In this document: positions 2,218 to 45,805 of the stretch, one piece after another
Layout of the letters: the number at the start of each line of letters is the position of its first letter
Numbering within the stretch: position 1 is the first letter of the stretch
Source: Fonticula alba ATCC 38817
Lineage: Eukaryota > Protista > Nucleariida
Length of the DNA: 58,659 nucleotides
Strand: one strand, 5' to 3'
Assembly (NCBI GenBank): GCA_000388065.2
Contig: KB932208.1
Program-made: the position numbers and the translations under genes
The notes under the pieces: generated by a model
The model's input: the letters and a program-made list of their open reading frames with translations, nothing else
Told to the model about the DNA's origin: nothing
Database searches by the model: none

Positions 2218-5200
2218 ATGGCACCGCGCCTGGCCCTCTGGCTGGTCGCCTGTTTGGGCGTCTGTGCTGGCAGGCTTGCGGCCGTTGGGGCCGCTCCTGC
2301 CCCTCACGCGACCCAGGAGCCGGAGATTGTGACCTTGCCGCAGAGCATCACCCTCTATTATCATCAGCTTGCCAGCTCATGGGCCCCACGGCCGGATACC
2401 ATCCTCGGCAATGCCCCGGTGTTCCATGGGAGCGAAGGAACATCGCTTGCTCGCGTGGATCCGGCGAACGCCTCAGTGATGGTGGTTCACCAGCGGGAGA
2501 TGGATCTCTCCGACCATTCTGACCATCGGTTGGGTGGAAGTTTCGGCCTGGTGACCCCCCTGCGGTTCGGGCCGGTTGCCACTTTCAATCCGCTGACCAC
2601 CCGGCCGGTGGTTTCGCCCAGTCGCGATGGCCCGATGTTGCTCTTTTTCATGGAGAACTCCATTCAAGCCTTGATCGAAGGCACCTGGCAGGGCCATAGC
2701 TTGAGCCCCTCGCAGTCCATCTTGGCATGGCATTCCTTGGGCTCGAAGTTCCTGCAGGTGTTGCTGTTCGACTCGTCCAGCGACCATCTCCTGGTTCTGG
2801 CCCTCTCGCATGGACAGTCACCTGCTGTCTTGCCGGCGATGGGCCTTTCGCCCGGGGTCGCCAGGGAGCGTCTGCATGCGGTTTCCGGTGTTGGCCCATC
2901 GTTTGTCTTTTGGTTTGACGATATCTTCGGTGTGGTGGCCCTCCCATGGGGAGGCGCGGTGATTTTGGGAAGCAGCGACACCCCCCCGGGGGGGACTATC
3001 GTGGATCTTGCCGCCTCGACCATCCTGAACTCCGACCAAGGCGACATTGCCCTCCTGCATCAGGACCGGGTGTCAGTCTGCTTGAATCACACACCCCTTG
3101 CCGAGTGTGAGACGTGGTTCCATGTGGCCCGTCCCCCGGGGCTGATGCCTGGCTCGGCGGCTCGCTTGTACCTGCCTGCTCCGGGGTCCCTGCATGAGCC
3201 CGTCAAATCGATCCTCTTCCAGGACACCGGTACCGGGCAGCTGTGGTGGCTGCACTTTGATACCCTCCGGCGATCGCCCTCCAGCTGGCAGCGGCTTCTC
3301 CTTCCAAATGGCCTCGCCCTGTCGGAAATAGTGGCCTTGCGCCCGGTACGCCTGGCCATCCGGCCTGGCTTCTCGACCTGGGGTGTTGGCAATGCGGTCG
3401 ATGCGTTTGTCGCCTCCGGCGACTTCCTGTGTATCGAGGATTCCAGTATCCTGTGCGGCCGGCCGAGCGAGCCTCGGGGCTATGCATGTGCCCCTGGCTG
3501 GGCTCCTTCGCATGGGCTCTTCCCCGGGCAGCTGTGCGGTGCTTGTCTCTCGGGCCACCGTCGAATCGGCCAGTATGGCGCCCCGGGTGCGCGCTGTCTT
3601 GGTGACACGATGTTCCCATGCGCTGGGAGGGGGTTGTGGGGGGGGGATACCTTGTCTCTGCCGTCCCAATGTGCTGTTGTCCCTGTTCCACGATGTGTCG
3701 GGTGAAGGGTCATGCTTCATGGCACCTCCTGGCCGAATGCCTTTCTTTCCCCTTGCTAACGCCCCATGCGGGCCCGCTCTTCGGCCGGCTGCTGTCCCCC
3801 TTGTCCCATGTTCTCCCCCTTGCCCGGCCTATGGCTCGCTGGCTCAGCCTCGTGCAGCCCCTGTGCCGGCCCGCATTGTCGCCAGTGTCTCGACCACCAA
3901 GGCTGTGTTCTATGTGAGGAGGGTTTTGTGCTTTTCCTCGACCCCAGCACCAGGGTGAGCACCTGTTTGGATTCCTGCCCGGCGGGCTATTCCTCCATGG
4001 CCTCGGGCGGTTGGCGCTGCCTCCCGACCGATCGAGCCATTCCTCCCCCGGGCATCCGGCCGCAGACCATTGTCTTGTCGGACTTCCCCGCTTCCCCGGT
4101 GGAATTCTTTGTCCCGAGTTTGCTTTGCTCTGTCAACGGTGTGATGCACTTGCTGCCGGAAAACCGCAGCCCCTCGCTGCTGGAGCAAAATCTCCTCGCC
4201 TTCCGGTCGACCAGCCAAAGTGCCCCCCTGTGGATTCGGGTTGCCCATGACGGGAGCCTCACATCCTCGACCATGGATGGGTGGCCCTTTTCCCAGGCGG
4301 GACCCGGGACATCCCCTCCGGCGGCGCAGTCCTATGTGGAGGTGGTCCTGGCATCCCAGGGCTCGGGGCCGCGGATTCTCAGTGTCTTGTGCGACCGGAC
4401 CGGCAACCTGCGCGTGGCCCGGATGGAATGCCGCCATCGGCCCCCGACCGAGGATGATCCTTGCGAAGTGGCATACTTCTGGGAATTCGACAGGCAAGTG
4501 GGCTGCCTCTCGGTGGGCCTGCTCGGGAAGGATATCGTGTCGATTGTGATGACGTCCGATGTGAAACCCACCCACATCATGCCGGTCAGTTCGACTGGCT
4601 CGGCCCTCGACCTCTGGCCATTGTCCGGGATGCATGGGCATCCAGTCGAGTTTCCGGTCGGGTGGTTTCCGAGAGACTCGCCCCTCGGCGACTGGGCCTT
4701 TGCCATGCCGAAGCCCGGGACCCAGGCGCGCGTGCTGCCGGCGGCCATGCTCCGGAAGATGGACAGTCGTGTGGCCGGATTCCCCGGGGCCACCTTGCAT
4801 CCTCCTCCCTCGGGCTACGAGCCCATACTCCTGGCGACCGGCCTTCGACGGTCGGACGGATTGGGGGAATTTTTCCTGGCGGGTCTGGCCCAATCCGGCG
4901 ACGGCCCCATGCTTTGGGAGGTGTGGCACTTCCCGGCTCCCGGGCGCGACACCGGGCTCATTGTGAGCATGCCTCACCGGCGCGAGATCCTCGGGCAGCT
5001 GCCCAGTGGCTTTTCCCAGCCCGGCGACAATCCCCAAGGGCGCTTCTTCTCGCTGGCCCTGGCCCCGGAGTCGGAATACCCGGCTGCCATGTTGCTTGTC
5101 ACTCGACGCATGGTTGGCTGGGCCCGTCTCTACTGCCCGATGGGGCCCGGCGAGCGGGTCCATTGTTGGCTCGAGCCGGCCTCCTTCGCGATGTTGGATC

Positions 5201-8200
5201 GGGACATCAACGCCCTGCCCATGGTGAATGTGCTCCCGCTGCCGGCCGGGGTGGCGGAAGCCCAGCTGGGGCCGTCGCCCTCCCGGGCGGTCTTCATGGC
5301 CGATGGCTCGGCGAATATTCGCGTCTTGCTGCTGGACGATGGGGCCCCATGTGTCGCTGGCACTGAGGGTCCCCTGTGCCAGCCCTGTGATTCGCTGTGC
5401 CTTGCATGCTCGGCCTCGGGCCCGGAGGCGTGCACGGCTTGTCGCCTGTCGCCTTTCGATCGGCCCGGCGTGTGTGTGGATGCCTGTCCCGAGGGCCTCA
5501 TCGAGTCGGGCAACGTGTGTGTCTGCGCCGGCGGGTGCGTGGATTGCGCGTCGCTTGGACACCCGCACGAGGAATATCACTGCCGGGCATGCCCGCCGCG
5601 GATGGCGCCCCTTGGGGGCACTTGTCAACCGTGCCATTCCTCATGCACGATATGCACGGCCCCCGGCAATCCGAGCGCGTGTGTTTTCTGCTCGGTCGGG
5701 AGTTTCGGCACGCTCGATGGTCGGTGTCTGGCGAGCTGCCCGGAAGGCACCTGGGCCGATATACCCAATGCCGCGTGCTGGCCATGTCCCACCGGCTGCA
5801 CACAGTGTGTCTCGGGAAGCCAGTGCACCGTGTGCTCCGATCGGCGCTTCCTTGCTCCTGGAGGCCAGTGCGAGCGCTGTGAAGACTCATGCGCCTCGTG
5901 TGAGAATGCGGCCAGCTGCACCGACTGCCAGCCGGGATTGGTCTTCCTCGATACCAATCCCATGGTGGCCTCCCTTTGTGGGAGCACCTGCGCACCGGGC
6001 GAGTATGTCGGCACGGAGCGATGCATGGCCTGCGGGCCGACGTGTGCCCTGTGCGCCGGGGCCGGCGATGCGTGTGCGGTGTGCGCGGCCGGACACCGGT
6101 GGTCGGGTGCCCCGCCGGCCGCCGGCGCCACCGGCGCCTGCGTGCCCTGTCCGGATGGGTGCGATTCGTGCACGGCCTCCCGGTGCCTGGCCTGTGAGCA
6201 GGGGCTCTTCCTGGACCGGCATGAGGGTTGCGTCCAAGCATGCCCCCTGGGCACCTACAACGACGGCCCCACAGGGACCTGCCAGCCGTGCGACGTGTCG
6301 TGTGCGGCCTGCGCCGGGGGCCTGGCCGGCGAGTGCACGGGCTGCGCCGCCGGGCTGGAGCTCGTTGCCACCGAGCCGGGGCTGGGCACGTGCGAGTCCG
6401 GCNNNNNNNNNNNNNNNNNNNNNNNNNNNNNNNNNNNNNNNNNNNNNNNNNNNNNNNNNNNNNNNNNNNNNNNNNNNNNNNNNNNNNNNNNNNNNNNNNN
6501 NNNNNNNNNNNNNNNNNNNNNNNNNNNNNNNNNNNNNNNNNNNNNNNNNNNNNNNNNNNNNNNNNNNAATTCCTGCCCACTTGGCACATCGGTCCAGGGC
6601 GGCTTGTGTTCCACATGCCATGGGTCGTGCCTTTCCTGCTACGGGCCTGCTGCCAACCACTGCCTCTCCTGTCGGTCGGGGGCTCCCCTGCTTCTGGAGG
6701 GTGCCTGTTTGTCTTCGTGCCCGGAGGGGACGACCGAGGAGGGCGGCTCGTGCGTCCCCTGCCCGGTGGGCTGCTCGGCATGCACGGACCCGGCTACCGG
6801 ACAGTGCTCTGTTTGCCGGGCATCATGGGTGCTGCTTGCTGGCACCTGCGTCGAAAGCTGCCCCCCGGGACAGTATGCGGCCGATGCCGAGCTCGGGGGC
6901 CAGGTGTGCCGGGCGTGCGACGGCACATGCCTCGAGTGCTCCGGGCCCGGCCCGGCCAAGTGCTCGGCGTGCCCGCCGGGGCTGATGCTCCATGAGGGCC
7001 GGTGCGTGGGGTCTTGCCCGGTGGGCATGTTCGAATGCCTGCTGGCCGGGCGGTGCGAGGCCTGCCCGGCCGGGTGCACGGCATGCACCGTGGCCGAGGA
7101 GAGCCCGGTGGGATGCGCGGCCGCCTGCTCGGCCTGCCAGGGGGGCCTCTTCCTGTCCTTTGCCACGGGCGAGTGCCTGCCTGGCTGTCCACCCGGGGAA
7201 TATGCCTTGGCCGGGGCATTCTCTTGCGCCCGGTGCCATGCCAGCTGTCGGAGCTGCTTCGAGAGGGAGCAATTCTGCACGAGCTGCCCCTCGGACGAGG
7301 CGTGGCTCGACTACGAGGCCGGCGTGTGTCTGAGTGCGTGTCCGGAAAGGCCCGTGGCGGAGGTGGAATTCCCGAATGCGCTGCCGCCGGCCCCGAAGCG
7401 CGCATGCCTGCCCTGTCCGGATGGATGCGATCGCTGCCGGCCCCGGTCGCCTGTGCCGGAGTGTGTGTTCGATGCGACCGGCGGCCTCGGCTGTCCGGCG
7501 ATGGCATCGTGCGACCTCTGTGCCACGGGGCTGCTGCTTCTGCAGGGCTCGGCATGTGTGAGCGTGTGTCCGGAGGGCTTTTTCGCCGACGTCGCCGAGG
7601 TCCCGCCGACTTGCTCGCCGTGTCACAGGAAGTGCTCCAGTTGCGTGGGCCCCGAGGCGGAAGACTGCACGGACCGGTCCCCGGGATCCCGTCGTCTCGG
7701 TGCGCACTGTGCCCTCCTCTTGGGGTTTTTCCTTTTTGCCCCCCGCCAGCCACTCACGTCCTCCCCCTCCTCCGCCACCTGTGCCCCTTCCTCCCCTGCC
7801 ACATCCCTGTGCTGTGCGCATGTGCATGGTGCGCACGGTTCCCGGTGACTGACTTCGCGGTGCTGGGGCTAGCTCTCGGCTTGGGCATCGGCCTCGGTGT
7901 GTTGCTTGTCCTGCTGCTGCTTTTGGTGGTGCTCTTCCTCCTGTGGCGCGTTCGCCAGCAACGCAGCGCCCTCAACAAGGTGTGCCCCTCGGCCGCGTCA
8001 TGGCTTCATGTGTATTCCACGTCCGGCGAATGGCCGTGTCTGACCACTTCCTCCATGTGCATATGGCACTGTAGCCCCCTGCTGGGGATGATGAAAGTAC
8101 GTGGGAGAGCGCTTGTCGCTGGAAGCCGCCCCGGGGCTGCGCCGGTGGGGAATGACTAACCGGCTGTATGGGCAGATGCCACGGTACTCAATACGATGGT

Positions 8201-9435
8201 GGAGTTGTCGCTGCCCGGGAGCATTCTGGTGGACATTGGCCAGAATTTTGCGCCCCTGGCCGGGGATGGCCTCGGCGCCGGGACCCAAGCGCGTGTGTTT
8301 GCCGCGCGCGCTGTCGGTGCCGGGACCTCCGACCGGCTGGGCTGTCCGGCGGTGGTTGCCATCAAGCAGCTGAAAACCGACCGACTGACGGCGTCGCAGG
8401 GGCTGCTCTTCCAGAATGAGGTGGCGCTGATGTGGCTGCTCCGGGACCATGGGAACATCGTCCGGCTGTATGGCTACAGCGAGACCCCGCCGGCCATCAT
8501 CATGGATCGCTTCGACACGGATCTCGGGCTGCTGCTTCACTCGGAGGCGGTCATCGAGGATGCCGTCCTCCTGGATATCATTCAACAATGGGGTGCGCTT
8601 GGGCGTGGGGCTCCTCCGGGTCGTGGCCGTGGCGGCAGTCCGACGGGCCAGGGGTGGGCGGGGGGCGTTTATGGATCTTCGCTTGGCTGCTCATCGGTCC
8701 AAGCCGGGGACTGATGGGTCTTTCTTCTTCTTTTTTTTTTCCTTTCCTTCACCAGCCACCGGCCTGGAGGCGATGCATACGCAGGGCGTGGCCCATCGAG
8801 ATCTGAAGCCGGGCAATGTGCTTGTCAGCCAGCGCCCCGGCGGCCGGTGGCATGCGGCCCTCGGCGATCTGGGCGCCAGTCGGAATCTCAATACCGACCG
8901 GTCCTCGGCCCTGGTCACCGATGCCCCTGCGCTGAATGCCCTCACGGCTCGGTACGCGGCGCCGGAGGTTTTGACCGCCGTCCAGCGGCGCCGAGGCCTG
9001 GAAATGGAGCTCCTCCTGCCGGCGGACATCTTCAGCGCGGCCATCATGCTTTGGGAGTGCCTCACTCGGACAACTCCCTGGGCCGGTGCGTGTGGGGGCT
9101 TTCCTTCTTTCCTCCGCATCTCCCCCGCTGTGTTCGCATTTCGGCCTCTCTCTCTCTCTCTCGTCGGGCTCCCTGCCGGCGGGGGATGGCCGAGCAGGGT
9201 GGGCGCCCTCGCCCTGGCACAAGACTGACCCCCTCGCGTGACAGGGAAAACCTTTGAAGAGATCACCGCCGATGTGTTGTTCGGGCACCGGCCGGACCTG
9301 GGCGCCCTCCGGACCGAATCGAACACCCCGCAGGTGGATCTCCTCCAGATGGCCTGGGATGCCAATCCCCATGTGCGGCCGGTGGCCGCCTCCTTCCGGC
9401 AAAAGTGCGCCATGCAGGCGGCCCTTCATCGCTGA
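2218..9435 (+). CDS. Receptor-like TKL-type Ser/Thr kinase with furin-like Cys-rich stalk (RD type), ~2095 aa, 7 exons
   Basis: Exons 2218-3586, 3848-7699, 7873-7979, 8075-8096, 8176-8592, 8756-9085, 9245-9435 sum to 6288 nt, in frame, all GT-AG. Signal peptide MAPRLALWLVACLGVCAG; CxxCHxxCxxC / CPxGxY repeats from ~5350-7680; TM LGLGIGLGVLLVLLLLLVVLFLLW. Kinase motifs GAGTQA, VAIK, FQNE, HRDLKPGN, DLG, YAAPE, DIFS. An N-gap lies inside exon 2. Confidence 0.9.
6403..6567. other. Assembly gap (165 N) inside the furin-repeat exon
   Basis: N run; the reading frame is preserved across it. Confidence 0.99.
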
Positions 9436-9623
9436 GGGGTATTCCCAGAGAGGGGGGGGGGCGGGGAGGTGGAGCGTGATGGCAACGACGTGCATCGGCG
9501 CGGTCGGTGTGGCCGACGAATGCACCCCAGCCGTTCCCGCGAAACCCCCATCTGGTGCAAGTGTTTGGTGCTTGGCCCTGGCCGGGGGGAGAGGAGCCCC
9601 TCGCGGCCGGGGGGGGGGGGGGG

Positions 9624-10408
9624 NNNNNNNNNNNNNNNNNNNNNNNNNNNNNNNNNNNNNNNNNNNNNNNNNNNNNNNNNNNNNNNNNNNNNNNNNNNNN
9701 NNNNNNNNNNNNNNNNNNNNNNNNNNNNNNNNNNNNNNNNNNNNNNNNNNNNNNNNNNNNNNNNNNNNNNNNNNNNNNNNNNNNNNNNNNNNNNNNNNNN
9801 NNNNNNNNNNNNNNNNNNNNNNNNNNNNNNNNNNNNNNNNNNNNNNNNNNNNNNNNNNNNNNNNNNNNNNNNNNNNNNNNNNNNNNNNNNNNNNNNNNNN
9901 NNNNNNNNNNNNNNNNNNNNNNNNNNNNNNNNNNNNNNNNNNNNNNNNNNNNNNNNNNNNNNNNNNNNNNNNNNNNNNNNNNNNNNNNNNNNNNNNNNNN
10001 NNNNNNNNNNNNNNNNNNNNNNNNNNNNNNNNNNNNNNNNNNNNNNNNNNNNNNNNNNNNNNNNNNNNNNNNNNNNNNNNNNNNNNNNNNNNNNNNNNNN
10101 NNNNNNNNNNNNNNNNNNNNNNNNNNNNNNNNNNNNNNNNNNNNNNNNNNNNNNNNNNNNNNNNNNNNNNNNNNNNNNNNNNNNNNNNNNNNNNNNNNNN
10201 NNNNNNNNNNNNNNNNNNNNNNNNNNNNNNNNNNNNNNNNNNNNNNNNNNNNNNNNNNNNNNNNNNNNNNNNNNNNNNNNNNNNNNNNNNNNNNNNNNNN
10301 NNNNNNNNNNNNNNNNNNNNNNNNNNNNNNNNNNNNNNNNNNNNNNNNNNNNNNNNNNNNNNNNNNNNNNNNNNNNNNNNNNNNNNNNNNNNNNNNNNNN
10401 NNNNNNNN
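9624..10408. other. Assembly gap (785 N) starting after a poly-G run
   Basis: N run. Confidence 0.99.
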
Positions 10409-10659: not shown

Positions 10660-11688
10660 ATGCGCTGCTTCACGGCACCCCCCCGCCGGGCTTTGGTCTT
10701 GGCCCTATTCCTGGCACTGGCCATGCTGGGAAGCTCCCTGGCCCTGCCGGCGCCGGCCGACCAGCCGGCCTGCGGCGCCGGGCAATACGCCTCCCCGGGC
10801 AGCCCGCCGGTCTGTGCACCCTGCCATGCCTCCTGTCGGAGTTGCTTCGACCGCGAGGACTTCTGCACCTCCTGCCCGATGGATGGGGCGTGGCTGCTGC
10901 CGGGGACTGGTGTGTGTGTTTCCGCCTGCCCGGCGGGCCAGTTCATCGGCGTGGCCTTCCCCGGGGCGGTGGCCCCGGCCCCGGGGCAAGTTTGCCTCAC
11001 CTGCCCTGATGGCTGTGAGGCGTGCTCGAGCCCGGGCGATGCGCCCGCTTGTGTTCTCACACCGGACGGGTCTCTGGACTGTCCGGCGGTGGCGCGGTGC
11101 GACCGCTGCGCCGAGGGGCTGCTGCTGCTGGATGGCACGACGTGCGTGGCAAGCTGCCCGGAGTCCGGGTACCTGACCGACTCCGAGGGCAAGTTTGCTC
11201 GGGTCCCGGCGTGTGTGGCGTGTGCGCCCCAGTGCACTGCGTGCAATGGGCCCGGGGCCGAGCAGTGCACCGCCGGCCCGGAGGCCCGGCGAAACCACGC
11301 CCTCGGTACGCATGCTGGCCCTGGCTGTGCCTGGCCCGGGCTCCTCCCTTTCCCTGGCTCTTCTCCTTCGTCGCACGATCGCTCCGTTCGGGCCGCTGCC
11401 TGCCTGCCTGCCTGCCTGTCGACTGACCGCTCGTTCCTTCTTTCTTTCTTTTTTTTTCTTCCCGGCGGGCCAGTCATCGGCTTGAGTGTCATCATTGGGC
11501 TGGTGGTGCTGGCCATCCTGATCATCGGCCTGACGCTGGCGATCCTGCGCCGTGCGAATCGCCTTCGGCGGAAGGACCGCCCGGCCCCCTCGCCGCCCTC
11601 GTCCCCCTCGATGACCACGGATACCGGCCGGTCCCGGCGTGCCGGGCCGTCGGAGAGCTCCATCCCGATGGATACCCTGCGCCGCTGA
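10660..11688 (+). CDS. Kinase-less single-pass receptor-like protein with ~4 furin-like repeats, ~286 aa, 2 exons
   Basis: Exons 10660-11305 and 11474-11688 (861 nt, phase-1 GTACGC..CAG intron). Signal peptide (ALVLALFLALAMLGSSLA), CHASCRSCFDREDFCTSCP repeats, TM VIGLSVIIGLVVLAILIIGLTLAIL, then a ~45-aa basic and Ser/Pro-rich tail. Confidence 0.85.
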   Translation: MRCFTAPPRRALVLALFLALAMLGSSLALPAPADQPACGAGQYASPGSPPVCAPCHASCRSCFDREDFCTSCPMDGAWLLPGTGVCVSACPAGQFIGVAFPGAVAPAPGQVCLTCPDGCEACSSPGDAPACVLTPDGSLDCPAVARCDRCAEGLLLLDGTTCVASCPESGYLTDSEGKFARVPACVACAPQCTACNGPGAEQCTAGPEARRNHALGTHAGPGCAWPGLLPFPGSSPSSHDRSVRAAACLPACLSTDRSFLLSFFFFLPGGPVIGLSVIIGLVVLAILIIGLTLAILRRANRLRRKDRPAPSPPSSPSMTTDTGRSRRAGPSESSIPMDTLRR

Positions 11689-16756: not shown

Positions 16757-16804
<48 letters not shown>

Positions 16805-17274
16805 ATGTGTCGTCGGGCTGCCTCATGCGTGCCTTTCCCCCGGGGGGTGGGGGTGGATGCCTTCGCCTGGACAGACCGATCGGCTGCCCCCTGGTGGGAT
16901 GATGACCACCGTGCGACAGGAGCTGGCGGTGGCCGGGCCCAGTGGCGTGCTTCTGTACGGGCTGCAGGCTGCCGGCGAGCAGCTGGCCATTGACCAGCAG
17001 CCCCGGACGGCTTGGCGGAGTGCCAGCCGCCCGGCCGGCATCTTTGCCCCCCTCGAGCCGGACACACTGGCCGTTGCCACCGGCGGGGAGGTGCACTTTG
17101 TCCGAGCCACGGCTGACGGCCCGGTCCTTCGCTCCATGTCCTTCGTGCGTGCCACTCCCCTTGCGGGGCCCCTTGGCAGTGGTGTGCTGGCGGCCCCGGG
17201 CCCGTTGCGACATCCATGGCAAACTGACCGACGATCGTCCTGCCCCCGTCCCACTCGACACGGTGCTGGGAACT

Positions 17275-17309
<35 letters not shown>

Positions 17310-22296: not shown

Positions 22297-22299
22297 ATG

Positions 22300-22307
22300 T
22301 TTTTTTT
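22300..22307 (+). terminator. Pol III oligo-T terminator (T8) of the tRNA
   Basis: T8 run 3 nt after the discriminator base. Confidence 0.85.
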
Positions 22308-25300: not shown

Positions 25301-25364
25301 CACCTTCCTGGCTCACTCGCTGCTCCGGCTCGGCCTGTGGCTCGCTCCGCCGAGTCGCGTTCAA

Positions 25365-31300: not shown

Positions 31301-32010
31301 AAGTGGCTCTCATGTGGCTCCTGCGTGAGCATCGGAATATCGTCCGGGTGTATGGCTACAGTGAGATGCCCCCGGCCATTGTGATGGAGCGCTTTGACAC
31401 GGACTTGAAGACTCTGCTGCACTCGGCGGTGGCCCTCACGGACCGGCAGCTGGCCGACATCATACGGCAGTGGGCCTCCGGCATGGAGGCCATGCACGCC
31501 CACGGGGTGGCCCATTGCGACCTGAAGCCGGCCAATGTCTTTGTTCGGATGCATGATGACGGAATGTGGCATGTCGCGCTGGGCGATTTGGGCACCAGCC
31601 GGAATCTGTCGGCCGAGCGGTCGTCGGCTCTGGTGAACTCCTTCCCCGAATTGAATGCCATGTCGGTGCCGTATGCATCGCCGGAGTTGCTTCGGGCCTT
31701 CCGGCAGGGTGTTCCCCTGGACCGGGGGGCCTTCTTGCCGGCCGATATCTACGCCGCTGGGATCATGCTGTGGGAGTGCTTGACCCGGTCGACATCTTGG
31801 TCCGGTCTCTCGATGGAGGTGATCATGGAGGCAGTTTGTCAGGAAAATGCCCGGCCCCCGGTGGAGCAACTCCCGGCCGAGGGCCCCTTCGTCCATGCCC
31901 GGGACCTTGTCGAGGCAGCATGGCAGCTGGATGCACAGCGACGCCCAGATGCCGGCACCTTCCGCCAGCAGTGTTCCATGTACTTTGTGGCGGCCGGGGG
32001 TCTCGATTGA
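25365..32010 (+). CDS. Receptor-like TKL-type kinase with furin-like stalk (non-RD, HCD), ~2130-2150 aa; frame discontinuity near 26360
   Basis: Signal peptide (LAPVLWLFVGFLVTLARG). Exon 1 is 25365-26711 with a frame switch between ORFs 25365-26432 and 26375-26806. Phase-1 intron 26712-26908 (GTGCGT..ACTGAC..TGCAG). Single exon 26909-32010 carries the furin repeats, TM (IGLAIGLAVGLLVVLVLLAVLAVLCV) and kinase (GAGGQA, VAVK, FQNE, HCDLKPAN, DLG, YASPE, DIYA). Confidence 0.85.
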
Positions 32011-36000: not shown

Positions 36001-39000
36001 TGGGCCCCTGCCCGGCCGGGAGGGCCAGCAAATCCGACCGGCAGGTGCCGGTGCAGTCGGTGCTTCGGATGCCGGTGCACTGGTGGCAGGAGACATGGCA
36101 CGGAAGGCAGCGACCGGCCATGGGGACGTGCTGGGGGGCGCATTCTTGGACACAGGTGCTCCCCTGGAGGAGGTGGTCCTGACACCGCCAGCAGTTCTCA
36201 TCGGTGGGCCCATTGCACTCGGCACAGGCCTCATGGCAGGGGAGACATGCCATGGAGGAGTCATCCCGGAAATGGCCCTCCAGGCAGGGAGACTCACATG
36301 CAAGCAGGCCACCCGGCCGGGGGACCTGCTCGAGGCCGGGGATGCAGGCGGTGCATTCGTCGGCCGATGGCCCGGCGCAGTCGGCGCATGTGGCATCACA
36401 CGGCTGGCAGGCGGCCAGGGCCGGTTGCCCGAATGCCCCGGCCGGGCAGGAGGCCACGCACCGACCGTCATGCGTCAGGAAGAGGTGCCCCTCGCAGGAG
36501 AGGCACATGCTCGAGGTGCAGGATGTGCACCCCGCGGGGCAGGCCATGCACGGGCCGGCGCCCGAAAGCCAGCCAGGAGGCCGGTGGAATCCGGGAGCAC
36601 ACACCTCGCAGGCGTCGGGGGCTCCGGAACACAGGGCACAGGACCGGTGGCAGGCATGACAGCGGCCGGGCCCGGGGAAGTCCCCCGGGTCGCAAGTGCT
36701 TGTGCACAGAGAGTCGAGCAGGGCATCCGGCGACAGGAAGACCAGCCCCGGCTGGCAGGCAGTACACGCACTGGCCGATGTGCAGGTGAGGCAGGCCGAG
36801 TGGCACACCGAGCAAGACCCGTCGCCGGCGTCAAAGCGCCGGGCATCACACTGGTCACAGGTGCCGGGTGTGGAGCAGGCAATGCAGCCGCTGTCGCAGG
36901 GGACACAGCGGCCATCCGCCAGGCGGAAGCCCATGGGACAATCGGTGGCACATGTCCGGCCATCGGGCTGGAGGGCCGTGGCGCCGGGGCAGGTCAGGCA
37001 GGCGATCGGGCTGCCGGGATGCGTGCATGTGGCGCAAGATGCGTGGCAGGCGTGGCAGGCGGTGGCCGTCGCATTGGGGGCCGTGCTGGCCGGGCAGGTG
37101 GAAACACATGTGCCGGAGTCCGGCAGCAGGAGCAGCCCCGGCTGGCAAGAGAGACACCTGTTGGGCTGGGAATCGCAGGAGGCACACCCGGGCACGCATT
37201 CGAAGCAGACGCCCATGGTGGCCTCCAGGAGGAAGCCCTGGCGGCAGGCCGTGCAACGGAAGGCATCCGCACAGGTGCTACACCCGGCCGGGCAGGGCTC
37301 GCATGCACGGGCATGCTCGTGTGGCCAATACCCGGGGGGGCATTCGGCCGCGGGAGCACATGAGCCATTGGGCTGGCGATATGCCCGGTCGTCGGAGCAG
37401 GCCAGGCAGGCAGTCGGGCTGCCCGGGGCCGCGCACTGGCTACAGGTGCTGTGGCAGGCCAGGCATCGGTCGGGGGCCGGGTCCGAGGGATCGAGTGCCA
37501 TGCCGGAGGGGCAGGCCGTGCAGAGGACCGACTCCCCGACTTCGGGGGCCGAACAGGCAGCACAGTCGGCACGGCAAAGGCATGCCCCGGAGGCGTGGCG
37601 ATGGAGGCCAGGCGGGCAGACGGGGAGACATGTGGCCGGGTCGGCGGGCAGGAAGAAGTTGCACCCGGGCTGGGAGCAGTCGGTGGCCAGGGGGCCGTGG
37701 CATGCTTGGCAGTCTTCATGGCAGGGGCCACACTCGGGGGCATATGTGCCCAGGGGACATGCCTCCGGGGCCACCTGCAGCAGGAAGGTGCTGGACGGAT
37801 TGGAGCGTGACACGATGAGGAAAGCGGCGGCGGCGGGCTGGCCATCCGAGAGAGAGCCCGACTGGGGAAGTTGAGCCGCGGTGATGAAGGTATGTTCGGT
37901 GACCGACAGGCCGGCCGGGTAGGTGGACATGTGTGAAGGCCCCAGCTGGCAGACGGCGTGGCCCAGGGGACAATGTAGCAGAAGGACGCCGAAGAAGTCG
38001 CGGTGCAACACCACTAAGGCACTGGGGTATTCGGGATACCCCTGCAGGTGGAGGGCCTGCGCATGGAAGACAGTCGAAGGGGCAGTGGATTTGTTCAGGG
38101 GGAGGGGGCCGCGGCTGCTGGGGGACCCGGCGATTTGCCGAGTGCGCTGTTGGGGCTCCATGCCGAGTGGATAATGGATGACAAGCCAATGGGGCACGGT
38201 GTTGATCAGGGCGATGCCCGTCAGCAGAAGATCATACTGGGGCAGGTGATGCGGTCGGGAACCGGAGGCCAATGCCATGGGGCGCCAAAAAATGGATGGC
38301 ACAATGCCGGAGTTGAGCATGTGGATGGGCCATGTGCTGGAGTGTGCGGCCGGGCGCCCAGCCGGAGGAGCGGGCTGCTGGCGCGGGGATGTGCTGCTGG
38401 TCGAGGTCCCGGACCGGGTGCCCACCGGGTGCCGGGACACCGCCGGGGCAAGTGGCATGACGTTCGGGGGATTGTGGGTCTGGATGTGCTGCCAGTCCTT
38501 GGTGGAGGTGCGTGCATCGCCGAAACTCACCAGGTCCCAGGGATGAGCAACGAAGCCGGCATTTTGGATGTACTGATAAACCCACGAGACGGGCTGACCG
38601 GTGGCCGGGTTGGTGTGGATGGCCATGGCGGCGGAGGTCCTTTGATCGGCTGTCAGGATGCCCTCCACTTTGATGAGGCTGCCGTCTGGGCGGAGCTCGT
38701 GAAAGGGACCATCATAGGAAACGACCGTCGGCGAGATGCGATTGCCAAGGGCTTGGGTGGAAAGGGACGAGGCCGGAGTCGCCAGTGGGGAGTGCAAAGC
38801 GGGGCATTCATCCTCCTCGCCATGAAGCGGAAGGTGGCACTCGAAGGTGATCTGGGACTGCTGGCCGGAAAGCACAATGAGCAACACCAGGCGGATGGTA
38901 TCGCCCTGGCGCAGTGGGCCAAGCTCGAACATCTGCCGGACGGAAGAGACGCTGGGAAGTCGCTCCAGCGGGTGGACCTGCAGCGGAGCTGTCAGGTCAC

Positions 39001-40751
39001 TGGCCAGGCTCCGGACATCGACCATGGCAAAGGTGCCGGTTTGCAAGATGGCCAACATGCCACCGGGCTCCCGGGCCGACAGCGAATCACGGGAAAGGTA
39101 GAGCCGGCCGTCTCGGTGGAACATGCGAGTTGGAGTGAGAGCCGCGATGTTTTTGTCGGCCTGCTGGGAGATCCGTGTCAGGGGCATATGGGGCCGGGAG
39201 GGGGGAGGATCGGGCTGGCACTCGGCCTGCGCCGGTTGATAGCCCGGGCCGCAGATGCTCACGCATTGGGCAGAGGGGGCGCCATTTACCAGGGTCCGAC
39301 GGAGCAGGTAGCCATCCATGCAAGCGGTGCACACCCCGGCCACACAGGCTCGACAGTGGTCTCCGGGGCAGGGCCGGCAGTCATCTGGGCAATGGTCGAG
39401 GCATGGTCGTGTGAGTAGCGTGATGTTGGTGGCGGTGGGAGGGGGGGAGCAATGCCAGGGGCAGGGGGACGGGGGCAGGAAACATGGGTGTACATCGGTA
39501 TGGAGAAAGGGCCACCGCGTGGAATCCATCGGCGCACGCGGCACAAAGCTCCATCGGCGAAGCCAAGGGCGCGTACACCCGACCGGGGGCGCATTTCCAC
39601 GAGCCGGTGGCCGGGTCGCACACGATCGAGGGGTCGGCCCCGGTGCACCCGAACAATGGGCCGGTGGGGAACACGCGCACATGTTGATGGGCCAGCCACA
39701 GTTCGGGGGGATGTGCGCGGGCATTGGCCATCGACACGGGCAGCATGGCGGACTGCAGGGGATTGAAGTGGCCCGGAGCTCGAACACGCTGCCACAGAAG
39801 CCGCGTGGGGTGGTAGTTCACGCGCCAGAGGGCTTTCGTGGATTGGTGGACCAGATGCAAGTACCCGGTGGGGAGGGTGATGTGCGGCACACGGGGGACC
39901 ATGTGGAGGAGGAGGTGGTCTTGGGCCTCGGACAGGGGACTGGTGAGGAGGTCGAGCCAGGTGTTGTTGGGACCCAGGCCAATGTAGATCTGCAGCTCGC
40001 CGGGCGTGACAATGACCAGATCCATGCGATCCGGGTCGGCCGTCAGGAAGCGCGTGGCAGCCATGTCGAGGATTGGCTGGCTGGTCGAGGTGGCTCGCGA
40101 TCGGGCGCCCTCTTGCAGCCAATACCAAGAAGAGGGCGTGGCTAGGAAGAGATTCCCGGGAAGACCGGCGGTCGCACTCCTCGGCTCAACGGCCAACTTG
40201 GACGAGGAGAAGATGTTGTTCTCGAAGTGCAGGAGGACCGCGGCGCCCTCATGATCGACCAGGATCCGGGCCACCGTCGGTGCGATAACATCCACCGCGA
40301 GGATAACTGGTTGGATGTTCCCGTCGAAGGAGTAGGGGTGATTGTTATGTTGCCAGGTCAGGTAGACAAGTTGTCTGTCTTGCCAGGCAAACATCGGCTG
40401 CTGAAGCTCCGGCGTAGGGAGGGCCATGAGCGTGGGGACGGCCGTTTCGGGGATATTGAAGAGGGTGAAGGATAGGTCGCTTTGTCGGGAGAAGAAGGAC
40501 CCGAGGCGCAGGGAGGGGAATAGGCCCTGCTCGGTGCGCTGCGGGTAGAAGTTGGCTGCTCGGTTGTCAAAGACGTATTGGACAATGGATCCCGGGGAGT
40601 ACATGCGGCCGAAGTTGTGGGCCGGCAGGGGGTCCATCTGGTGGGGGCTTTCCACGAGAAAGGTGTCCGGAAGGTCCACATCGGCTGTGGACCCGGCCCA
40701 CAGCGGGCTGAGGAGTGCAAGCACCGCCAGGAGCAACGTCCAGAGCGACAT
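33030..40751 (-). CDS. Receptor-like TKL-type kinase with furin-like stalk (non-RD, HCD), ~2334 aa, 8 exons
   Basis: Exons 40751-39494, 39384-34720, 34630-34524, 34414-34399, 34326-34300, 34205-34035, 33949-33892, 33732-33030 sum to 7005 nt, in frame, all GT-AG. Signal peptide MSLWTLLLAVLALLSPLWAG; TM LGLGVGLGLLLLLLLLALAICLLW; kinase GTGAQA, VAIK, FQNE, HCDLKPAN, DFG, YAAPE. Confidence 0.9.
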
Positions 40752-41399
40752 GTGGCTTTTGGCGGGCGAGCAAACGGTCTGAGGGAGGATGGGTGGGGGG
40801 AGGGGGGGGGGGTGTGCTTGTCGGAGTTGACCAGGGCGTGGGACCCGGGCCGAGCCATCCTTTTGGAGGGGAACCTGCGGCGATCGTGTTCGTTTGTTAC
40901 TTCTCCCCGCCAAGGGGCCCCGATGCATGTGGAATCCCCATCCGACGAGACCCCATCAGTTGATGCCGGCCGACCAGGGGCGGGGCGGGGCGGGGCGGGG
41001 GGGGGGGCCACGCCCCAGGTGCCAACTGCATTGTCCCGGCCGCTGCCACGCCTCGCTCGAGTGCCAACCCTCGGGCCTTGGGGGCACATTATGGCCAGGC
41101 GGCGGTCGGGCAGGGCGCGGGGAGCGTCCGGATCATGCCGGGTTGCGAGGTCCTCGTCTGGGGGGAGCACGGGGGGAGGAGGCGGGGGGGTCGTTGCAGC
41201 CTCTCCCGCGGGAGGAACACCAGGAGAAAAGGCATCTGAATGGCGGGCCTTGCCGGGCCATGTTCGCTGCCCCCCCCCCCCCCCCCATCCCCTGCCCGGA
41301 AAGTGAATGCCCCTCGGGTTGAGGCCAGCGCTGCGCGTCGAGAACCGCGGCCCTCAAGGCGTCAGCTTGGGATGCCTTCCGGGCCGGCACCCATGTGGC

Positions 41400-43450: not shown

Positions 43451-43560
43451 CACATGAATTGCCCCCCTCCGGAGGCGACTCCCCCGATGTAACTGGTTGT
43501 GTCTTTGGGAGGGGGGGGCTTTCCCCGGGGGGGAGGGGGGCGGGAGGCGGAGTGGCGATA

Positions 43561-45805
43561 TCAGTCAGCCTCGCACATCAGGCCATCCGCCGAGAGAGTG
43601 TACCCCGGGGCACAGGCCACACACTGGAGGGCACGCTGCTCCGGGTGGTGGGGGTGTTTGACAAAGCAGTGGAGGCAATGGTCCGGGCACGGCACGGCAA
43701 AGCGGTCCTTCTGGGTCTGGTAGAAGAGCCCCCAGCCGGGCTGGGTGAGGGCATCGGCCGTGCACCGGGCGGCCGGGGTGATATCGAAGGAGCTGGCCGG
43801 GTCCAGCTGCTTGACCCGGGGGATGTGGTTGGGGCTGGCGGTGCACTGCATGCAGCCGATGCCCAGGCCGTTGTAGCAGGTGCCGCAGCCGCCGCCACAG
43901 GGGAGGCAAGCCTTGGCATACTTGTAGAAGCCCTCCGGGCAGGTGGTGAAGCACTCGCTGTCGCCGAAGAGGGCGTGGGCGAACTTGCAGGCGGTGCAGT
44001 TGGTGGCATTGGTGCAGGTGGCGCAGCCCGGGTCCAGGCAGGGCAGGCACTGCTTGCCGACTTGGTAGAAGCCCTCCGGGCAGTGGGCCACGCAGTACTG
44101 GCGCTGCTTCTTCTCGCGCGGCAGGACCAGCAGCATGCCGTCCCGGCAGACGGTGCAGTTGTCGGTGTACAGGTGGCATTGGGCGCAGTTTTCGTGGCAG
44201 GGCTGGCACTGTTGCTGGGCCGGCAGCGGGTCGAAGTCCCACGTGGTGCCGGAGCCGCAGGGCGAGTAGCACTCATCGGCTCCGAGGATGAAGGAGGGGT
44301 AGCACCGGTAGCAGGTGTACTTGTCGGTGCACAGGGCACAGTCCACATCGCAGGGGGAGCAAATGCCGAAGCGATTGTAGGTGGCCCCGGGGCAGGTGGT
44401 GCGGCAGGCATTTTGATGGAGCACATGGTTGGGGGTCTTGCAGCTGAGGCAGATGCTCGGGTCTTCGTGGGCACACCGCTCGCACTTGGGATCCAGGCAG
44501 GGGGAACACCGGCCGGCCAGGGAATCCTTGGTCGTCTGGGGGGGGCAGGTGTGACCACAGGAGCCGTCGGGATGGGCGAAAAAGCCCCGCAGGCAGGAAA
44601 GACACCGGGCCGGATTGGTCGGGTCACAGTGGAGGCAATTGCGCGGGCAGGCGAGGCATGTGCCGGCTCCATTGTCCACCGTGGTGGCCGGGCATTGGGG
44701 CTCGGCTTCGGGGTCGCCGTGGGCACCGTAGCCCCGGACACAGGCGCCCGTGTGGACGGGCTGGCCCTGGGCGGCGAAGGCCTTGGTGCTGTGTGCCAGG
44801 AGGAAGCGCCCGGCCGGGCACCGGGTGCAATCCTTGGCTCCGGGGCCGGCGCACTCGTCGCACGAGTCATGACACTGGAAGCACACGCCGGGGCGGCTGC
44901 ACTTCAGCAGATGGCCATACTCCGGGCGGGCGAACACCTCGTCGGTGGGGGCCGCGTGGCGGGACATGGGCCAGGCCGCGCAGTCGAAGCCCTCGGGCAC
45001 CAGGCGCCGGGGGATGCAGTGGTCGCCGCAGGGGAGATGGTCGGCCGTGGGGCAGGCACTGACACAGCGCCGGTCGGCATTCAGCCAGTACCCCGGGGCA
45101 CACTGGGCGCAATCTTCATTGATGTGGGGATGGGCAAGGACCTGGCAGCCGGGCAGGTCGAGGGGCTCCGGGTGGCAGAACCCCTCGCCGGCGGCTTGGA
45201 ACCGACAGACGGCACACTGCTTGTGGTTGCCGGGCACCACGTTCCAGCAGTGGGCCGGGCCAATTTGCAGGAGCTTCGCGCTGGACACCGCCAAGTCGGG
45301 GAGCTCCTTATCCAGGAAGGCATAGCCATCGACCAGGCGATAGGCGCTACTGTACTGGAGGCACTTGAGGTCGCCGGATTCGTACTTGGCGCGGAGGCAC
45401 CGGCGCAGGCTCGGGTAGCAATACTCGTGGTTCAGGGCCTCGCCTGATGCCAGTCCAGCGGGGAGGGGGGGGGGGGGGGGCAAGAAACACCGGCACAAAG
45501 CCCGTCCATGGCAGGAGAGGAGGGGGGGGGCAGTGGACAGAGTGCAGGGGGATGCTCGGTCAGGCGGCGTGGGGCATGCCTCCAGGGAGCAAGGCGGATG
45601 CAAGGGAAGGGGCGGGGTGCATGTGGAAGGCGTGCATGCGGACATCGGGGGGCCATGGGGCGTGGGTCGTCGTACCGGGGGCATTGCATCTGGCACTCGT
45701 GATGCGGGTGAGGTCCTCCTGGGCACTGGCAAAGCCCACGACGCCGCTTGCCAGGAGGAGCAAGAGGGCCGAGAGGAGACGCCAGCCGGGCGTGGCGGGG
45801 AGCAT
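43561..45805 (-). CDS. Secreted furin-like Cys-rich repeat protein without TM or kinase, ~670 aa, 2 exons
   Basis: Exons 45805-45676 and 45443-43561 (2013 nt, phase-1 GTACGA..CAG intron). Signal peptide WRLLSALLLLLASGVVGFASA; continuous CxxC / CPxGxY repeats; ends LMCEAD* with no hydrophobic anchor. Confidence 0.85.

What the first reader, a model, noticed from the sequence alone, without database searches (positions are those of the whole stretch)
2218..45805. Candidate recognition system: one RD kinase, two non-RD kinases, a kinase-less receptor, a secreted form and dead paralogues in one cluster
Seen: five intact genes share furin-like repeats, and together they cover every topology of a receptor system (three kinases, one TM protein without kinase, one secreted protein), plus three probable relics. 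Established: plant immunity combines RD co-receptors (BAK1), non-RD pattern-recognition kinases (FLS2, XA21) and kinase-less receptor-like proteins. Inference: this cluster could be a convergent system for recognising microbes, prey or kin in a protist, evolving by birth and death.
Basis: partly seen in the sequence, partly recalled or inferred. Interest (0 to 1): 0.85.

Follow-up and report, generated by a model that had tools for sequence, protein, structure and literature searches.

The report
Fonticula receptor kinase gene neighbourhood
This stretch of the amoeba Fonticula alba holds three large cell-surface receptor kinases, a mini receptor without a kinase and an unrelated secreted cysteine-rich protein; the receptors belong to a family of about 60 genes with very variable tips, but nothing shows that these five genes work together as an immune-like system.

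Summary
The window is the last 58.7 kb of Fonticula alba scaffold KB932208.1. All five genes exist and are annotated in GenBank.

- **Gene A** (2218-9435, +) has an HRD (RD) kinase.
- **H696_05065** (10660-11688, +) is a 286-aa kinase-less mini receptor.
- **Gene C** (25365-32010, +) and **gene D** (33030-40751, -) have HCD (non-RD) kinases.
- **H696_05070** (43561-45805, -) is secreted.

RNA contigs show gene A spliced, with the in-frame stop at 3703 inside an intron. They also show that the apparent frameshift in gene C is a one-base assembly error, so GenBank's model is cut short at the N-terminus.

No relics were found. The secreted protein belongs to a separate six-member family.

The cluster's make-up is not special. 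In the family of at least 56 paralogues, 28 of 41 kinases are non-RD. A, C and D sit in three different subclades, each nearest to genes on other scaffolds.

New here: both cysteine-poor heads are predicted beta-propellers, not EGFR L domains. Head identity is about 20% against about 60% for the kinase. 47 of 49 membrane spans carry GxxxG motifs.

A recognition role is plausible for the family but untested. The scan has flagged this family on other Fonticula DNA several times.

The parts
2218..9435 (+). Gene A: receptor kinase with an RD (HRD) catalytic loop. GenBank's model has 1939 aa; my spliced model has 2095 aa including 55 X for the gap. Order: signal peptide, propeller head 1, short Cys-rich module, propeller head 2, furin-like stalk, membrane span, TKL-type kinase.
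   Evidence: Gene call. The spliced model gives one open frame from the signal peptide to the stop.
3587..3847 (+). Intron 1 of gene A (GT..AG, 261 nt). It holds the in-frame stop codon at 3703-3705.
   Evidence: Joint seen in runs X2, X3 and X4, and depth is 0 over 3600-3799. Homology to paralogues stops near 3598 and resumes at 3851.
6403..6567 (.). Assembly gap inside gene A's furin-like stalk. About 145 residues are expected here, against 55 codons as written.
   Evidence: RNA loose ends at 6402 are.
7873..7979 (+). Separate exon of gene A for the membrane span (LALGLGIGLGVLLV..., tandem GxxxG). It is flanked by introns 7700-7872 and 7980-8074. A 22-nt micro-exon follows at 8075-8096, then intron 8097-8175.
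   Evidence: RNA joints, splice letters, translation, GxxxG count.
8176..9435 (+). Kinase domain of gene A in three exons (8176-8592, 8756-9085, 9245-9435). HRD lies at 8794-8802. VAIK, DLG and the catalytic Asn are all present.
   Evidence: Intron 9086-9244 is seen in RNA. Intron 8593-8755 is inferred from the frame, GT..AG ends and low depth.
9624..10408 (.). Assembly gap between gene A and the mini receptor. It is intergenic as far as can be seen.
10660..11688 (+). H696_05065, the mini receptor, 286 aa. It has a signal peptide, about four furin-like repeats (25 Cys), a membrane span without GxxxG, and a Ser/Pro-rich tail of about 60 aa. There is no kinase. Exons are 10660-11305 and 11474-11688.
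   Evidence: The best match is gene A residues 1568-1739, at 52% identity. All 24 aligned Cys are conserved. No RNA run was listed as holding it.
25365..32010 (+). Gene C: receptor kinase with a non-RD (HCD) loop at 31513-31521. The true product is about 2149 aa with a signal peptide and head 1. GenBank's model (P0001, 26375-32010, 1812 aa) is cut short. Intron at 26712-26908. The membrane span and kinase are not interrupted by introns.
   Evidence: RNA covers 25251-31199. The corrected frame is open over 2149 codons.
26352..26356 (+). Run of five G in the assembly. All RNA contigs have six. This one-base assembly error explains the apparent frameshift in gene C.
   Evidence: 'put in behind 26356: G' at full depth in X1-X4.
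33030..40751 (-). Gene D (P0026, 2334 aa): receptor kinase with a non-RD (HCD) loop at 33528-33536 and a DFG motif. Head 1 exon is 39486-40751. Head 2 and stalk are 34715-39388. The membrane-span exon is about 34530-34691. Kinase exons are 34036-34206, 33888-33953 and 33030-33731.
43561..45805 (-). H696_05070: secreted furin-repeat protein, 670 aa, 78 Cys, with a signal peptide and no membrane span. Exons are about 45674-45805 and 43561-45450. It belongs to a separate six-member family.

Best explanation
The finding is an old neighbourhood of members of one large gene family specific to Fonticula alba. The family encodes type-I receptor Ser/Thr (TKL-like) kinases. Next to them sits one gene of an unrelated small family of secreted furin-repeat proteins.

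Each full receptor (A, C, D) is built in the same order:
- a signal peptide;
- a seven-bladed beta-propeller head;
- a short cysteine-rich module;
- a second beta-propeller;
- a stiff stalk of about 1000 residues of furin-like repeats, with 47-62 CxxC motifs counted over the whole protein;
- a membrane span with tandem GxxxG motifs;
- a kinase with all catalytic residues.

SHOWN: the gene structures; transcription and splicing of A and C; the domain order; the RD or non-RD state of each kinase; the family's size and spread; and the gradient of divergence from head to kinase.

INFERRED: the propeller heads bind outside ligands. Binding brings receptors together through the GxxxG membrane spans. 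The kinases then signal, with RD members switched by activation-loop phosphorylation and the Cys/Gly members regulated differently or relying on a partner. The mini receptor is an old partial copy of gene A's membrane-near repeats. It may modulate such complexes or may be silent.

The genes most likely act as separate sensors of the surroundings (bacterial prey, other cells or substrate), not as one fixed RD plus non-RD plus kinase-less plus secreted unit.
For: IDENTITY. The window codes for proteins 100% identical to F. alba entries on KB932208.1.

FAMILY. At least 56 F. alba paralogues lie on at least 14 scaffolds. Outside Fonticula only generic furin-repeat proteins (PCSK5) or generic kinases match.

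KINASE. Pfam Pkinase E 8.6e-30. The best solved relative is B-Raf at E 1e-18. VAIK, HxD, the catalytic Asn and D[LF]G are all present.

HEADS. The AlphaFold2 model of head 1 has pLDDT 84.8 and pTM 0.87; head 2 has pLDDT 76.8. Both match beta-propellers such as DDB1 BPB and Nup133. Only Fonticula paralogues match head 1 closely, at TM 0.81-0.82.

EXPRESSION. RNA shows spliced transcripts of A and C.

MEMBRANE SPAN. GxxxG is present in 47 of 49 spans.

DIVERGENCE. Mean pairwise identity is 0.22 for head 1, 0.24 for head 2, 0.51 for the stalk and 0.61 for the kinase.

THE CLUSTER IS NOT A SPECIAL UNIT. The tree places A, C and D in three subclades. The family base rate is 24 HCD, 4 HGD and 13 HRD. 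The secreted gene is of another family.

MINI RECEPTOR. 24 of 24 Cys are conserved with gene A, and the intron before the membrane-span exon is kept.
Against: - No ligand, localisation, kinase activity or interaction has been measured for any member.
- Expression evidence comes from assembled contigs of four small runs from two samples of one study. Culture conditions are unknown.
- D and F were not checked against RNA here.
- The mini receptor has no RNA support.
- Physical clustering of an RD kinase, two non-RD kinases and a kinase-less form is also what a co-receptor design would look like, and my data cannot exclude co-regulation.
- A second F-type gene (H696_05297) lies close, by locus tag, to receptor-family genes H696_05292 and H696_05294. 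This hints that the neighbourhood of the two families may not be pure chance.
- The kinase tree used a quick search and has many weakly supported forks.
Confidence: 0.7

Rival explanations
1. The cluster is one functional recognition module convergent with plant pattern-triggered immunity. Non-RD receptors (C, D) bind ligands, the RD kinase (A) acts as the shared co-receptor, the mini receptor acts like a receptor-like protein, and the secreted protein acts as a decoy or ligand. The locus evolves by birth and death.
For: - The topologies and the RD and non-RD states are as described.
- Non-RD kinases with Cys at this position are linked to innate immune receptors in plants and animals (PMC8463890).
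- Heads are hypervariable.
- GxxxG membrane spans would allow heteromers.
- Another note of this scan reports an RD plus non-RD pair elsewhere in the genome (unchecked).
Against: - The composition equals the most probable random draw from the family, P = 0.44.
- The members are distant paralogues from three subclades.
- RD kinases mostly sit together in one array on another scaffold.
- There are no relics in the window.
- The secreted protein is unrelated to the receptors.
- Gene A has full-size heads of its own, unlike a short co-receptor.
- The mini receptor lacks the GxxxG motif and RNA support.
Confidence: 0.12
2. The family, this cluster included, serves cell-cell adhesion or kin recognition during collective feeding and aggregative fruiting. 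It would not sense microbes. This would be comparable in role to polymorphic self-recognition receptors of other social amoebae.
For: - Fonticula alba is an aggregative organism (PMC5055082).
- It has large, variable ectodomains with propeller heads on long stalks.
- Other family members carry integrin-alpha-type FG-GAP modules (P0079; scan notes, unchecked).
Against: - No data exist on expression during aggregation or on polymorphism between isolates; only one strain is sequenced.
- Sixty very different heads fit many different ligands better than self-matching.
Confidence: 0.12
3. Part of the cluster is decaying. The mini receptor is a silent remnant of a partial duplication, and gene A is broken within the unread gap. 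Fewer than five genes would then be functional.
For: - No RNA run was listed as holding 10660-11688.
- RNA contigs next to the gap differ from the window at about 2% of positions, and the 126 bases after the gap are not matched in the same way.
- About 90 residues are missing beyond the nominal gap length.
Against: - The mini receptor keeps an open frame, a signal peptide, 24 of 24 Cys and its splice sites at 52% identity to gene A. A dead copy would not be expected to do so.
- Gene A is transcribed and correctly spliced on both sides of the gap.
- The index look-up is a weak negative.
Confidence: 0.06

Closest known systems
Entamoeba histolytica transmembrane kinases (TMKs, e.g. PATMK)
   Same: Both are large, lineage-specific families in an amoeboid phagocyte. 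Both are type-I proteins with a signal peptide, a CXXC-rich ectodomain (25 CXXC repeats in PATMK), one membrane span and a cytoplasmic kinase. PATMK is on the cell surface and takes part in phagocytosis (PMC2211552).
   Different: - No Entamoeba protein appeared among the listed matches, so common descent of the whole architecture is not shown.
- The Fonticula proteins add two beta-propeller heads.
- They keep the catalytic residues checked (VAIK lysine, HxD aspartate, catalytic Asn, D[LF]G) and a GxGxxA form of the glycine-rich loop. PATMK lacks the conserved glycine-rich motif and may be a pseudokinase (PMC2211552).
Plant receptor kinases of pattern-triggered immunity (non-RD EFR, FLS2 and XA21 with the RD co-receptor BAK1; receptor-like proteins)
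   Same: - Both are large expanded families of single-pass receptor Ser/Thr kinases.
- In both, RD members coexist with non-RD members, and the non-RD members carry Cys in place of Arg (EFR C848, PMC8463890).
- Both have kinase-less relatives.
   Different: - The ectodomains are unrelated: propellers plus furin repeats here, leucine-rich repeats or LysM in plants.
- The best solved kinase relative here is B-Raf, not a plant receptor kinase or IRAK.
- The RD member here is a full-size receptor, not a short co-receptor.
- No immune function has been tested.
Animal EGFR/ErbB and insulin receptor families
   Same: Both alternate cysteine-poor and cysteine-rich ectodomain modules. Both have furin-like repeats (Pfam GF_recep_IV and Furin-like_2 hits), a single membrane span with GxxxG-type motifs and a cytoplasmic kinase.
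   Different: - The cysteine-poor modules here are beta-propellers, not L-domain beta-helices.
- The catalytic loop is HxDLKPxN, the Ser/Thr type, not the tyrosine kinase type.
- Fonticula has no tyrosine kinases (PMC4342544).
- The stalk is about ten times longer.
Met/Ron and plexin-type receptors (Sema propeller followed by a cysteine-rich PSI module)
   Same: Both place a seven-bladed beta-propeller at the tip, followed by a small cysteine-rich module, on a stalk leading to a membrane span. In Met the span leads to a kinase. This comparison rests on my own knowledge of those families.
   Different: - No Sema, PSI or IPT match was found in Pfam or among the fold matches.
- There are two propellers here.
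- The kinase is of the TKL type.
R-spondin-like secreted furin-repeat proteins (comparison for H696_05070 only)
   Same: Both are secreted and made of furin-like cysteine-rich repeats. UniProt names two of its Fonticula paralogues 'R-spondin Fu-CRD domain-containing'.
   Different: The similarity is generic to the repeat. H696_05070 has 670 aa and 78 Cys, and no other domain was found. No relatives outside Fonticula were found beyond PCSK5-type repeats.

Membership tests
Eukaryotic protein kinase superfamily (Pfam Pkinase, PF00069) | Profile match above the curated cut-off. | tested here: met
   Gene C scores 104.4 bits against a cut-off of 31.7, E 8.6e-30. GenBank's models of A and D carry PF00069 and PF07714.
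Eukaryotic protein kinase superfamily (Pfam Pkinase, PF00069) | Catalytic residues: VAIK lysine, HxD aspartate, catalytic-loop Asn, DFG/DLG aspartate. | tested here: met
   A has VAIK, HRDLKPGN and DLG. C has VAVK, HCDLKPAN and DLG. D has VAIK, HCDLKPAN and DFG.
TKL (tyrosine kinase-like) group of Ser/Thr kinases | Kinase domain closest to TKL members such as Raf, MLK or IRAK. | tested here: inconclusive
   The best solved relatives are B-Raf and RAF1, but only at E 1e-18 to 1e-13. GenBank names the genes 'TKL protein kinase'. No kinome-wide tree was built.
Receptor tyrosine kinases of the EGFR/ErbB type | Cysteine-poor ectodomain modules are receptor L domains (right-handed beta-helix). | tested here: not met
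   There is no Recep_L_domain hit. Both heads are predicted as beta-propellers with good confidence.
Receptor tyrosine kinases of the EGFR/ErbB type | Tyrosine kinase catalytic loop (HRDLAARN or HRDLRAAN type). | tested here: not met
   The loops read H[RC]DLKP[GA]N. A published survey found no tyrosine kinase in Fonticula (PMC4342544).
Plant RLK/Pelle - animal IRAK family, which contains the non-RD immune receptors | Kinase domain groups with RLK/Pelle/IRAK kinases. | tested here: inconclusive
   All 60 listed solved-structure matches are B-Raf or RAF1. No plant receptor kinase or IRAK is among them. No explicit tree with those families was made.
Plant RLK/Pelle - animal IRAK family, which contains the non-RD immune receptors | Non-RD catalytic loop, with Cys or Gly in place of Arg. 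| tested here: met
   C and D have HCD. Across the family there are 24 HCD, 4 HGD and 13 HRD. This is a shared trait, not proof of membership.
Furin-like cysteine-rich repeats (Pfam PF15913, PF14843) | Profile match above the curated cut-off. | tested here: met
   Gene A's stalk scores Furin-like_2 37.4 (cut-off 28) and GF_recep_IV 34.2 (cut-off 29.5). Gene C (27.7 and 23.5) and gene F (27.5) fall just below the cut-offs. Gene D matched only the VSP model (23.1 bits). The mini receptor matched no family; it is placed in the family only through the family profile and its 52% identity to gene A.
Entamoeba transmembrane kinase (TMK) family | Sequence kinship of the whole protein to TMKs, beyond shared CXXC repeats and a generic kinase. 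| tested here: inconclusive
   No Entamoeba protein is among the 120 listed matches. The search favours close relatives and has length limits. The architecture is alike (PMC2211552).
The Fonticula double-propeller furin-stalk receptor family (defined here) | Head 1 - Cys-rich module - head 2 - stalk - GxxxG membrane span, colinear with the family profile. | tested here: met
   A, C and D align along the whole profile. H696_05065 matches only profile positions 1626-1795. H696_05070 matches only repeats, at 58-72 bits, so it is not a member.

The most novel reading that the evidence does not exclude
The family of about 60 genes, of which this cluster is a sample, is a germline-encoded repertoire of diversified recognition receptors in a bacterivorous, aggregative relative of fungi. 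Its double-propeller tips evolve very fast, or are kept different, while the kinase end is kept alike, possibly by gene conversion. Most of its kinases have independently taken the Cys/Gly non-RD form known from plant and animal innate immune receptors. That would be a third, independent case of the link between non-RD kinases and recognition receptors.
Probability: 0.25. Interest if true: 0.8.

Novelty: new variant of a known kind. Interest (0 to 1): 0.45.

Why it matters
Fungi are reported to lack receptor kinase architectures (PMC6733946), and Fonticula has no tyrosine kinases (PMC4342544). Yet this sister lineage of fungi carries dozens of single-pass receptor Ser/Thr kinases with an ectodomain plan I found described nowhere in the papers held.

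If the variable propeller heads bind bacterial or cellular ligands, the family would give a tractable case of how an amoeba tells prey, partners and kin apart. It would also test whether loss of the RD arginine goes with recognition receptors outside plants and animals.

For this particular 44-kb cluster the practical results are:
- corrected gene models (gene C is about 337 residues longer than in GenBank);
- evidence that the mix of gene types here is what the family's make-up predicts.

Tried and rejected
1. **Gene C as a frameshifted pseudogene.** Rejected. RNA contigs of all four runs carry one more G at 26356, which restores one frame from ATG 25365.
2. **The stop at 3703 as a nonsense mutation, or two separate genes.** Rejected. 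It lies in a spliced intron.
3. **Relics.** I searched with a family profile with filters off, and with 59 paralogues. None was found.
4. **The 914-aa gene at 14250-18872 as a diverged paralogue.** Rejected. It has no Pfam hit and no profile similarity to either head.
5. **EGFR-type L domains.** Rejected in favour of beta-propellers.
6. **Head 1 and head 2 as an internal duplication.** No profile-profile similarity was found, probability 0.7%. Both being propellers, very old kinship cannot be excluded.
7. **H696_05070 as a truncated receptor.** Rejected. It belongs to a separate family.
8. **A closer fold relative for head 1 in AlphaFold DB clusters.** Only Fonticula paralogues match closely; the rest are generic propellers at TM about 0.5.
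9. **Literature.** Seven full-text searches found no description of Fonticula receptor kinases. This covers only the library held.
10. **Expression of the mini receptor.** Only an index look-up was possible, and it listed no holder.
11. **dN/dS on the heads.** Not attempted. At about 20% identity the sites are saturated.

Full report
**Where the window comes from.** The longest open frame (26671-32010) is 100% identical to a GenBank protein of Fonticula alba called 'TKL protein kinase'. That gene lies on scaffold KB932208.1 of assembly GCA_000388065.2. The window corresponds to record positions 1800733-1859391, which are the last 58.7 kb of the scaffold. Composition is 60-70% G+C. There are three runs of N: 6403-6567, 9624-10408 and 53515-53534.

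**What is annotated.** GenBank's gene calls inside the finding are:

| Gene | Window coordinates | Strand | Length (aa) | Note |
|---|---|---|---|---|
| A | 2218-9435 | + | 1939 | kinase |
| H696_05065 | 10660-11688 | + | 286 | mini receptor |
| unnamed | 14250-18872 | + | 914 | unrelated, no Pfam match |
| C (P0001) | 26375-32010 | + | 1812 | kinase |
| D (P0026) | 33030-40751 | - | 2334 | kinase |
| H696_05070 | 43561-45805 | - | 670 | secreted |

**Gene A and the first gap.**
- RNA contigs from four runs (two samples, one study) lie on gene A. They show GT..AG joints at 3587-3847, 7700-7872, 7980-8074, 8097-8175 and 9086-9244. Depth is zero inside the first intron, so these runs are RNA and not contaminating DNA.
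- The stop codon at 3703 lies in that first intron. Homology to paralogues stops near 3598 and resumes at 3851.
- With one more inferred intron (8593-8755), the exons give a single open frame of 2095 codons from a signal peptide to the stop at 9435.
- The gap at 6403-6567 falls in the furin-like stalk. The family profile is matched up to position 1286 on the left and from 1431 on the right.
- Nine paralogues have 142-146 residues where the gap is written as 55 codons. The true gap is therefore probably near 435 nt.
- RNA contigs extend 83-255 letters beyond 6402. The first thirty letters read, in frame, CPEGQYRDGV, a typical repeat start. These contigs differ from the window at 8-12 of about 500 positions, so they may belong to a near-identical paralogue or reflect poor assembly beside the gap.
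- Frame continuity is thus likely, not proven.
- The second gap lies between gene A's stop and the mini receptor's start.

**Gene C.**
- Upstream of GenBank's start, the frame 25365-26432 is homologous to the first head domain of paralogues. It then runs into another frame at about 26345-26380, with no room for an intron.
- All contigs of all four RNA runs have one extra G behind 26356, a run of five G in the assembly.
- With that G, the frame is open from ATG 25365, which is followed by a signal peptide, to the stop at 32010. That gives 2149 residues, in line with the paralogues.
- GenBank's model is therefore cut short by an assembly error, and gene C is a complete two-head receptor.
- RNA covers 25251-31199, and depth falls to a minimum over 26600-26999, where the inferred intron 26712-26908 lies. 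No splice joint was listed there; the intron rests on GT..AG ends and the frame.

**The kinases.**
- Three kinase domains are present, at 8176-9435 (+), 30991-32007 (+) and 33030-34206 (-).
- Catalytic loops are HRDLKPGN in A and HCDLKPAN in both C and D. The ATP lysine, catalytic Asn and D[LF]G are present in all three.
- The loop is of the Ser/Thr type. The nearest solved kinases are B-Raf and RAF1, at E 1e-18 to 1e-13.

**The mini receptor.**
- H696_05065 has a signal peptide, about four furin-like repeats, a membrane span encoded by a separate exon as in A and D, and a Ser/Pro-rich tail.
- Its best match is the membrane-near part of its neighbour, gene A, at 52% identity. All 24 aligned cysteines are kept. 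This argues for constraint.
- It is the only protein of its size class that the large database returns.
- It lacks the GxxxG motif.
- No RNA run was listed as holding it, which is a weak negative.

**The secreted protein.**
- H696_05070 has a signal peptide, a 223-nt intron, 78 cysteines and no membrane span.
- It matches the receptor profile only through generic repeats, at 58-72 bits.
- It has five closer Fonticula paralogues of 496-678 residues at 43-71% identity.
- It is therefore not a secreted form of the receptor.
- One of its paralogues, H696_05297, lies close by locus tag to receptor-family genes H696_05292 and H696_05294. This deserves a genome-wide test.

**Relics.** tblastn with 59 Fonticula paralogues, and a profile of 23 full-length members run without filters on all stop-to-stop frames, find nothing beyond A, the mini receptor, C, D and F. 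The 914-aa gene shows no similarity to either head profile and no Pfam family. The 'dead paralogues' are most likely the first exons of A, C and D seen as separate open frames.

**Architecture.**
- Conserved cysteines divide the ectodomain into a Cys-poor head 1, a module with about 13 conserved Cys, a Cys-poor head 2, and a stalk of about 1000 residues.
- With alignments of 22 paralogues, AlphaFold2 gives confident all-beta models: head 1 with pLDDT 84.8 and pTM 0.87, head 2 with pLDDT 76.8.
- Both match beta-propellers, for example DDB1 BPB, Nup133 and LGI1 EPTP, and weakly some lectins.
- In AlphaFold DB only two Fonticula proteins match head 1 closely (TM 0.81-0.82). Everything else is a generic propeller at about 0.5.
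- The two heads show no profile similarity to each other.
- The membrane spans of 47 of 49 members carry tandem GxxxG motifs. This is a classic helix-packing motif (my own knowledge) and fits signalling by dimerisation.

**The family.**
- One search lists at least 56 Fonticula paralogues in the searched length range, on at least 14 scaffolds. Fourteen lie on a 619-kb scaffold and sixteen on a 2.3-Mb scaffold.
- About 17 lack a kinase.
- Outside Fonticula only proprotein convertase-type furin repeats or generic kinases match.
- Among 41 kinases, 24 are HCD, 4 HGD and 13 HRD.
- A kinase tree places A, C and D in three different subclades, each nearest to genes on other scaffolds. It needs at least four RD to non-RD changes. 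It also shows that eight RD members form one clade, all on the 619-kb scaffold.
- A, C and D are 51-56% identical in the kinase and 15-24% in the heads.

Mean pairwise identity rises along the protein:

| Region | Mean pairwise identity |
|---|---|
| Head 1 | 0.22 |
| Cys-rich module | 0.35 |
| Head 2 | 0.24 |
| Stalk | 0.51 |
| Membrane span and juxtamembrane | 0.57 |
| Kinase | 0.61 |

Some pairs have 90% identical kinases with 17-20% identical first heads. That points either to very fast head divergence or to homogenisation of the 3' end.

**Reading.**
- The cluster is real and its genes are live as far as tested.
- Its mix of types is what the family's base rates give. One RD among three kinases has P = 0.44.
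- Its members are old paralogues, so the locus gives no sign of a dedicated RD co-receptor design or of recent birth and death.
- The wider idea, that this family is a recognition repertoire, is consistent with the divergence gradient, the non-RD majority and the kinase-less forms. EFR also carries Cys at this site, and non-RD kinases are linked to innate immunity (PMC8463890).
- That idea rests on analogy only.
- The closest described analogue in an amoeba is the Entamoeba transmembrane kinase family, with CXXC-rich ectodomains and a role in phagocytosis (PMC2211552).

**Literature.** Published surveys state that fungi lack receptor kinase architectures (PMC6733946) and that Fonticula has no tyrosine kinases (PMC4342544). 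I found no paper in the held library that describes these Fonticula receptors. The scan itself has flagged the same family on other Fonticula DNA at least eight times; none of those notes had a follow-up.

Noticed in passing
window 26352-26356: The assembly has a run of five G where all RNA contigs have six. Because of this, GenBank's protein for gene C (P0001, 1812 aa) starts at an internal Met and lacks the signal peptide and the first propeller, about 337 residues.
   Followed up: yes
window 14250-18872 (+): An annotated 914-aa gene sits between the mini receptor and gene C. It has no Pfam match and no similarity to the receptor family. It contains (CA/GT)n tracts in or near it.
   Followed up: partly
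window 55410-56933: A tandem array of units of about 230 nt (3.8 copies, 72-77% alike) lies near the scaffold end. It gives a long spurious open frame at 54978-56609. No telomere-type repeat is seen at the last 400 bases of the window, which is also the scaffold end.
   Followed up: partly
window 7873-7979, 11474-11688, about 34530-34691, and 30934-31011: The membrane span is encoded by its own small exon in genes A and D and in the mini receptor, but it is fused to its neighbours in gene C. Gene C has no intron from 26909 to its stop, so it appears to have lost the introns of its 3' half.
   Followed up: partly
window 8075-8096: A 22-nt micro-exon in gene A's juxtamembrane region is supported by RNA joints in all four runs.
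   Followed up: yes
window 5886-6402 and 6568-6693: RNA contigs beside the first gap have higher depth and differ from the window at about 2% of positions. The stretch just after the gap is not matched in the same way. Either a near-identical paralogue is expressed or the assembly is poor next to the gap.
   Followed up: partly
other F. alba scaffolds (proteins P0007, P0016, P0018, P0019, P0021, P0030, P0043, P0046): Eight RD kinases form one clade on a single 619-kb scaffold. Where compared, pairs have kinase identity of 80-90% but head identity of only 17-31%. This suggests gene conversion of the kinase end or extreme head divergence.
   Followed up: partly
other F. alba loci: H696_00016, H696_00019 and H696_00021; H696_05297: The secreted furin-repeat family of H696_05070 has three members among the first 21 genes of a 4.8-Mb scaffold. 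Another member lies next, by locus tag, to receptor-family genes H696_05292 and H696_05294. Both families may favour scaffold ends or each other's company.
   Followed up: no
window 26712-26790 and about 33790-33880: (GT)n and (CT)n microsatellites sit inside introns of genes C and D. In a raw six-frame reading they look like odd CVCVCV or SLSLSL peptides.
   Followed up: no
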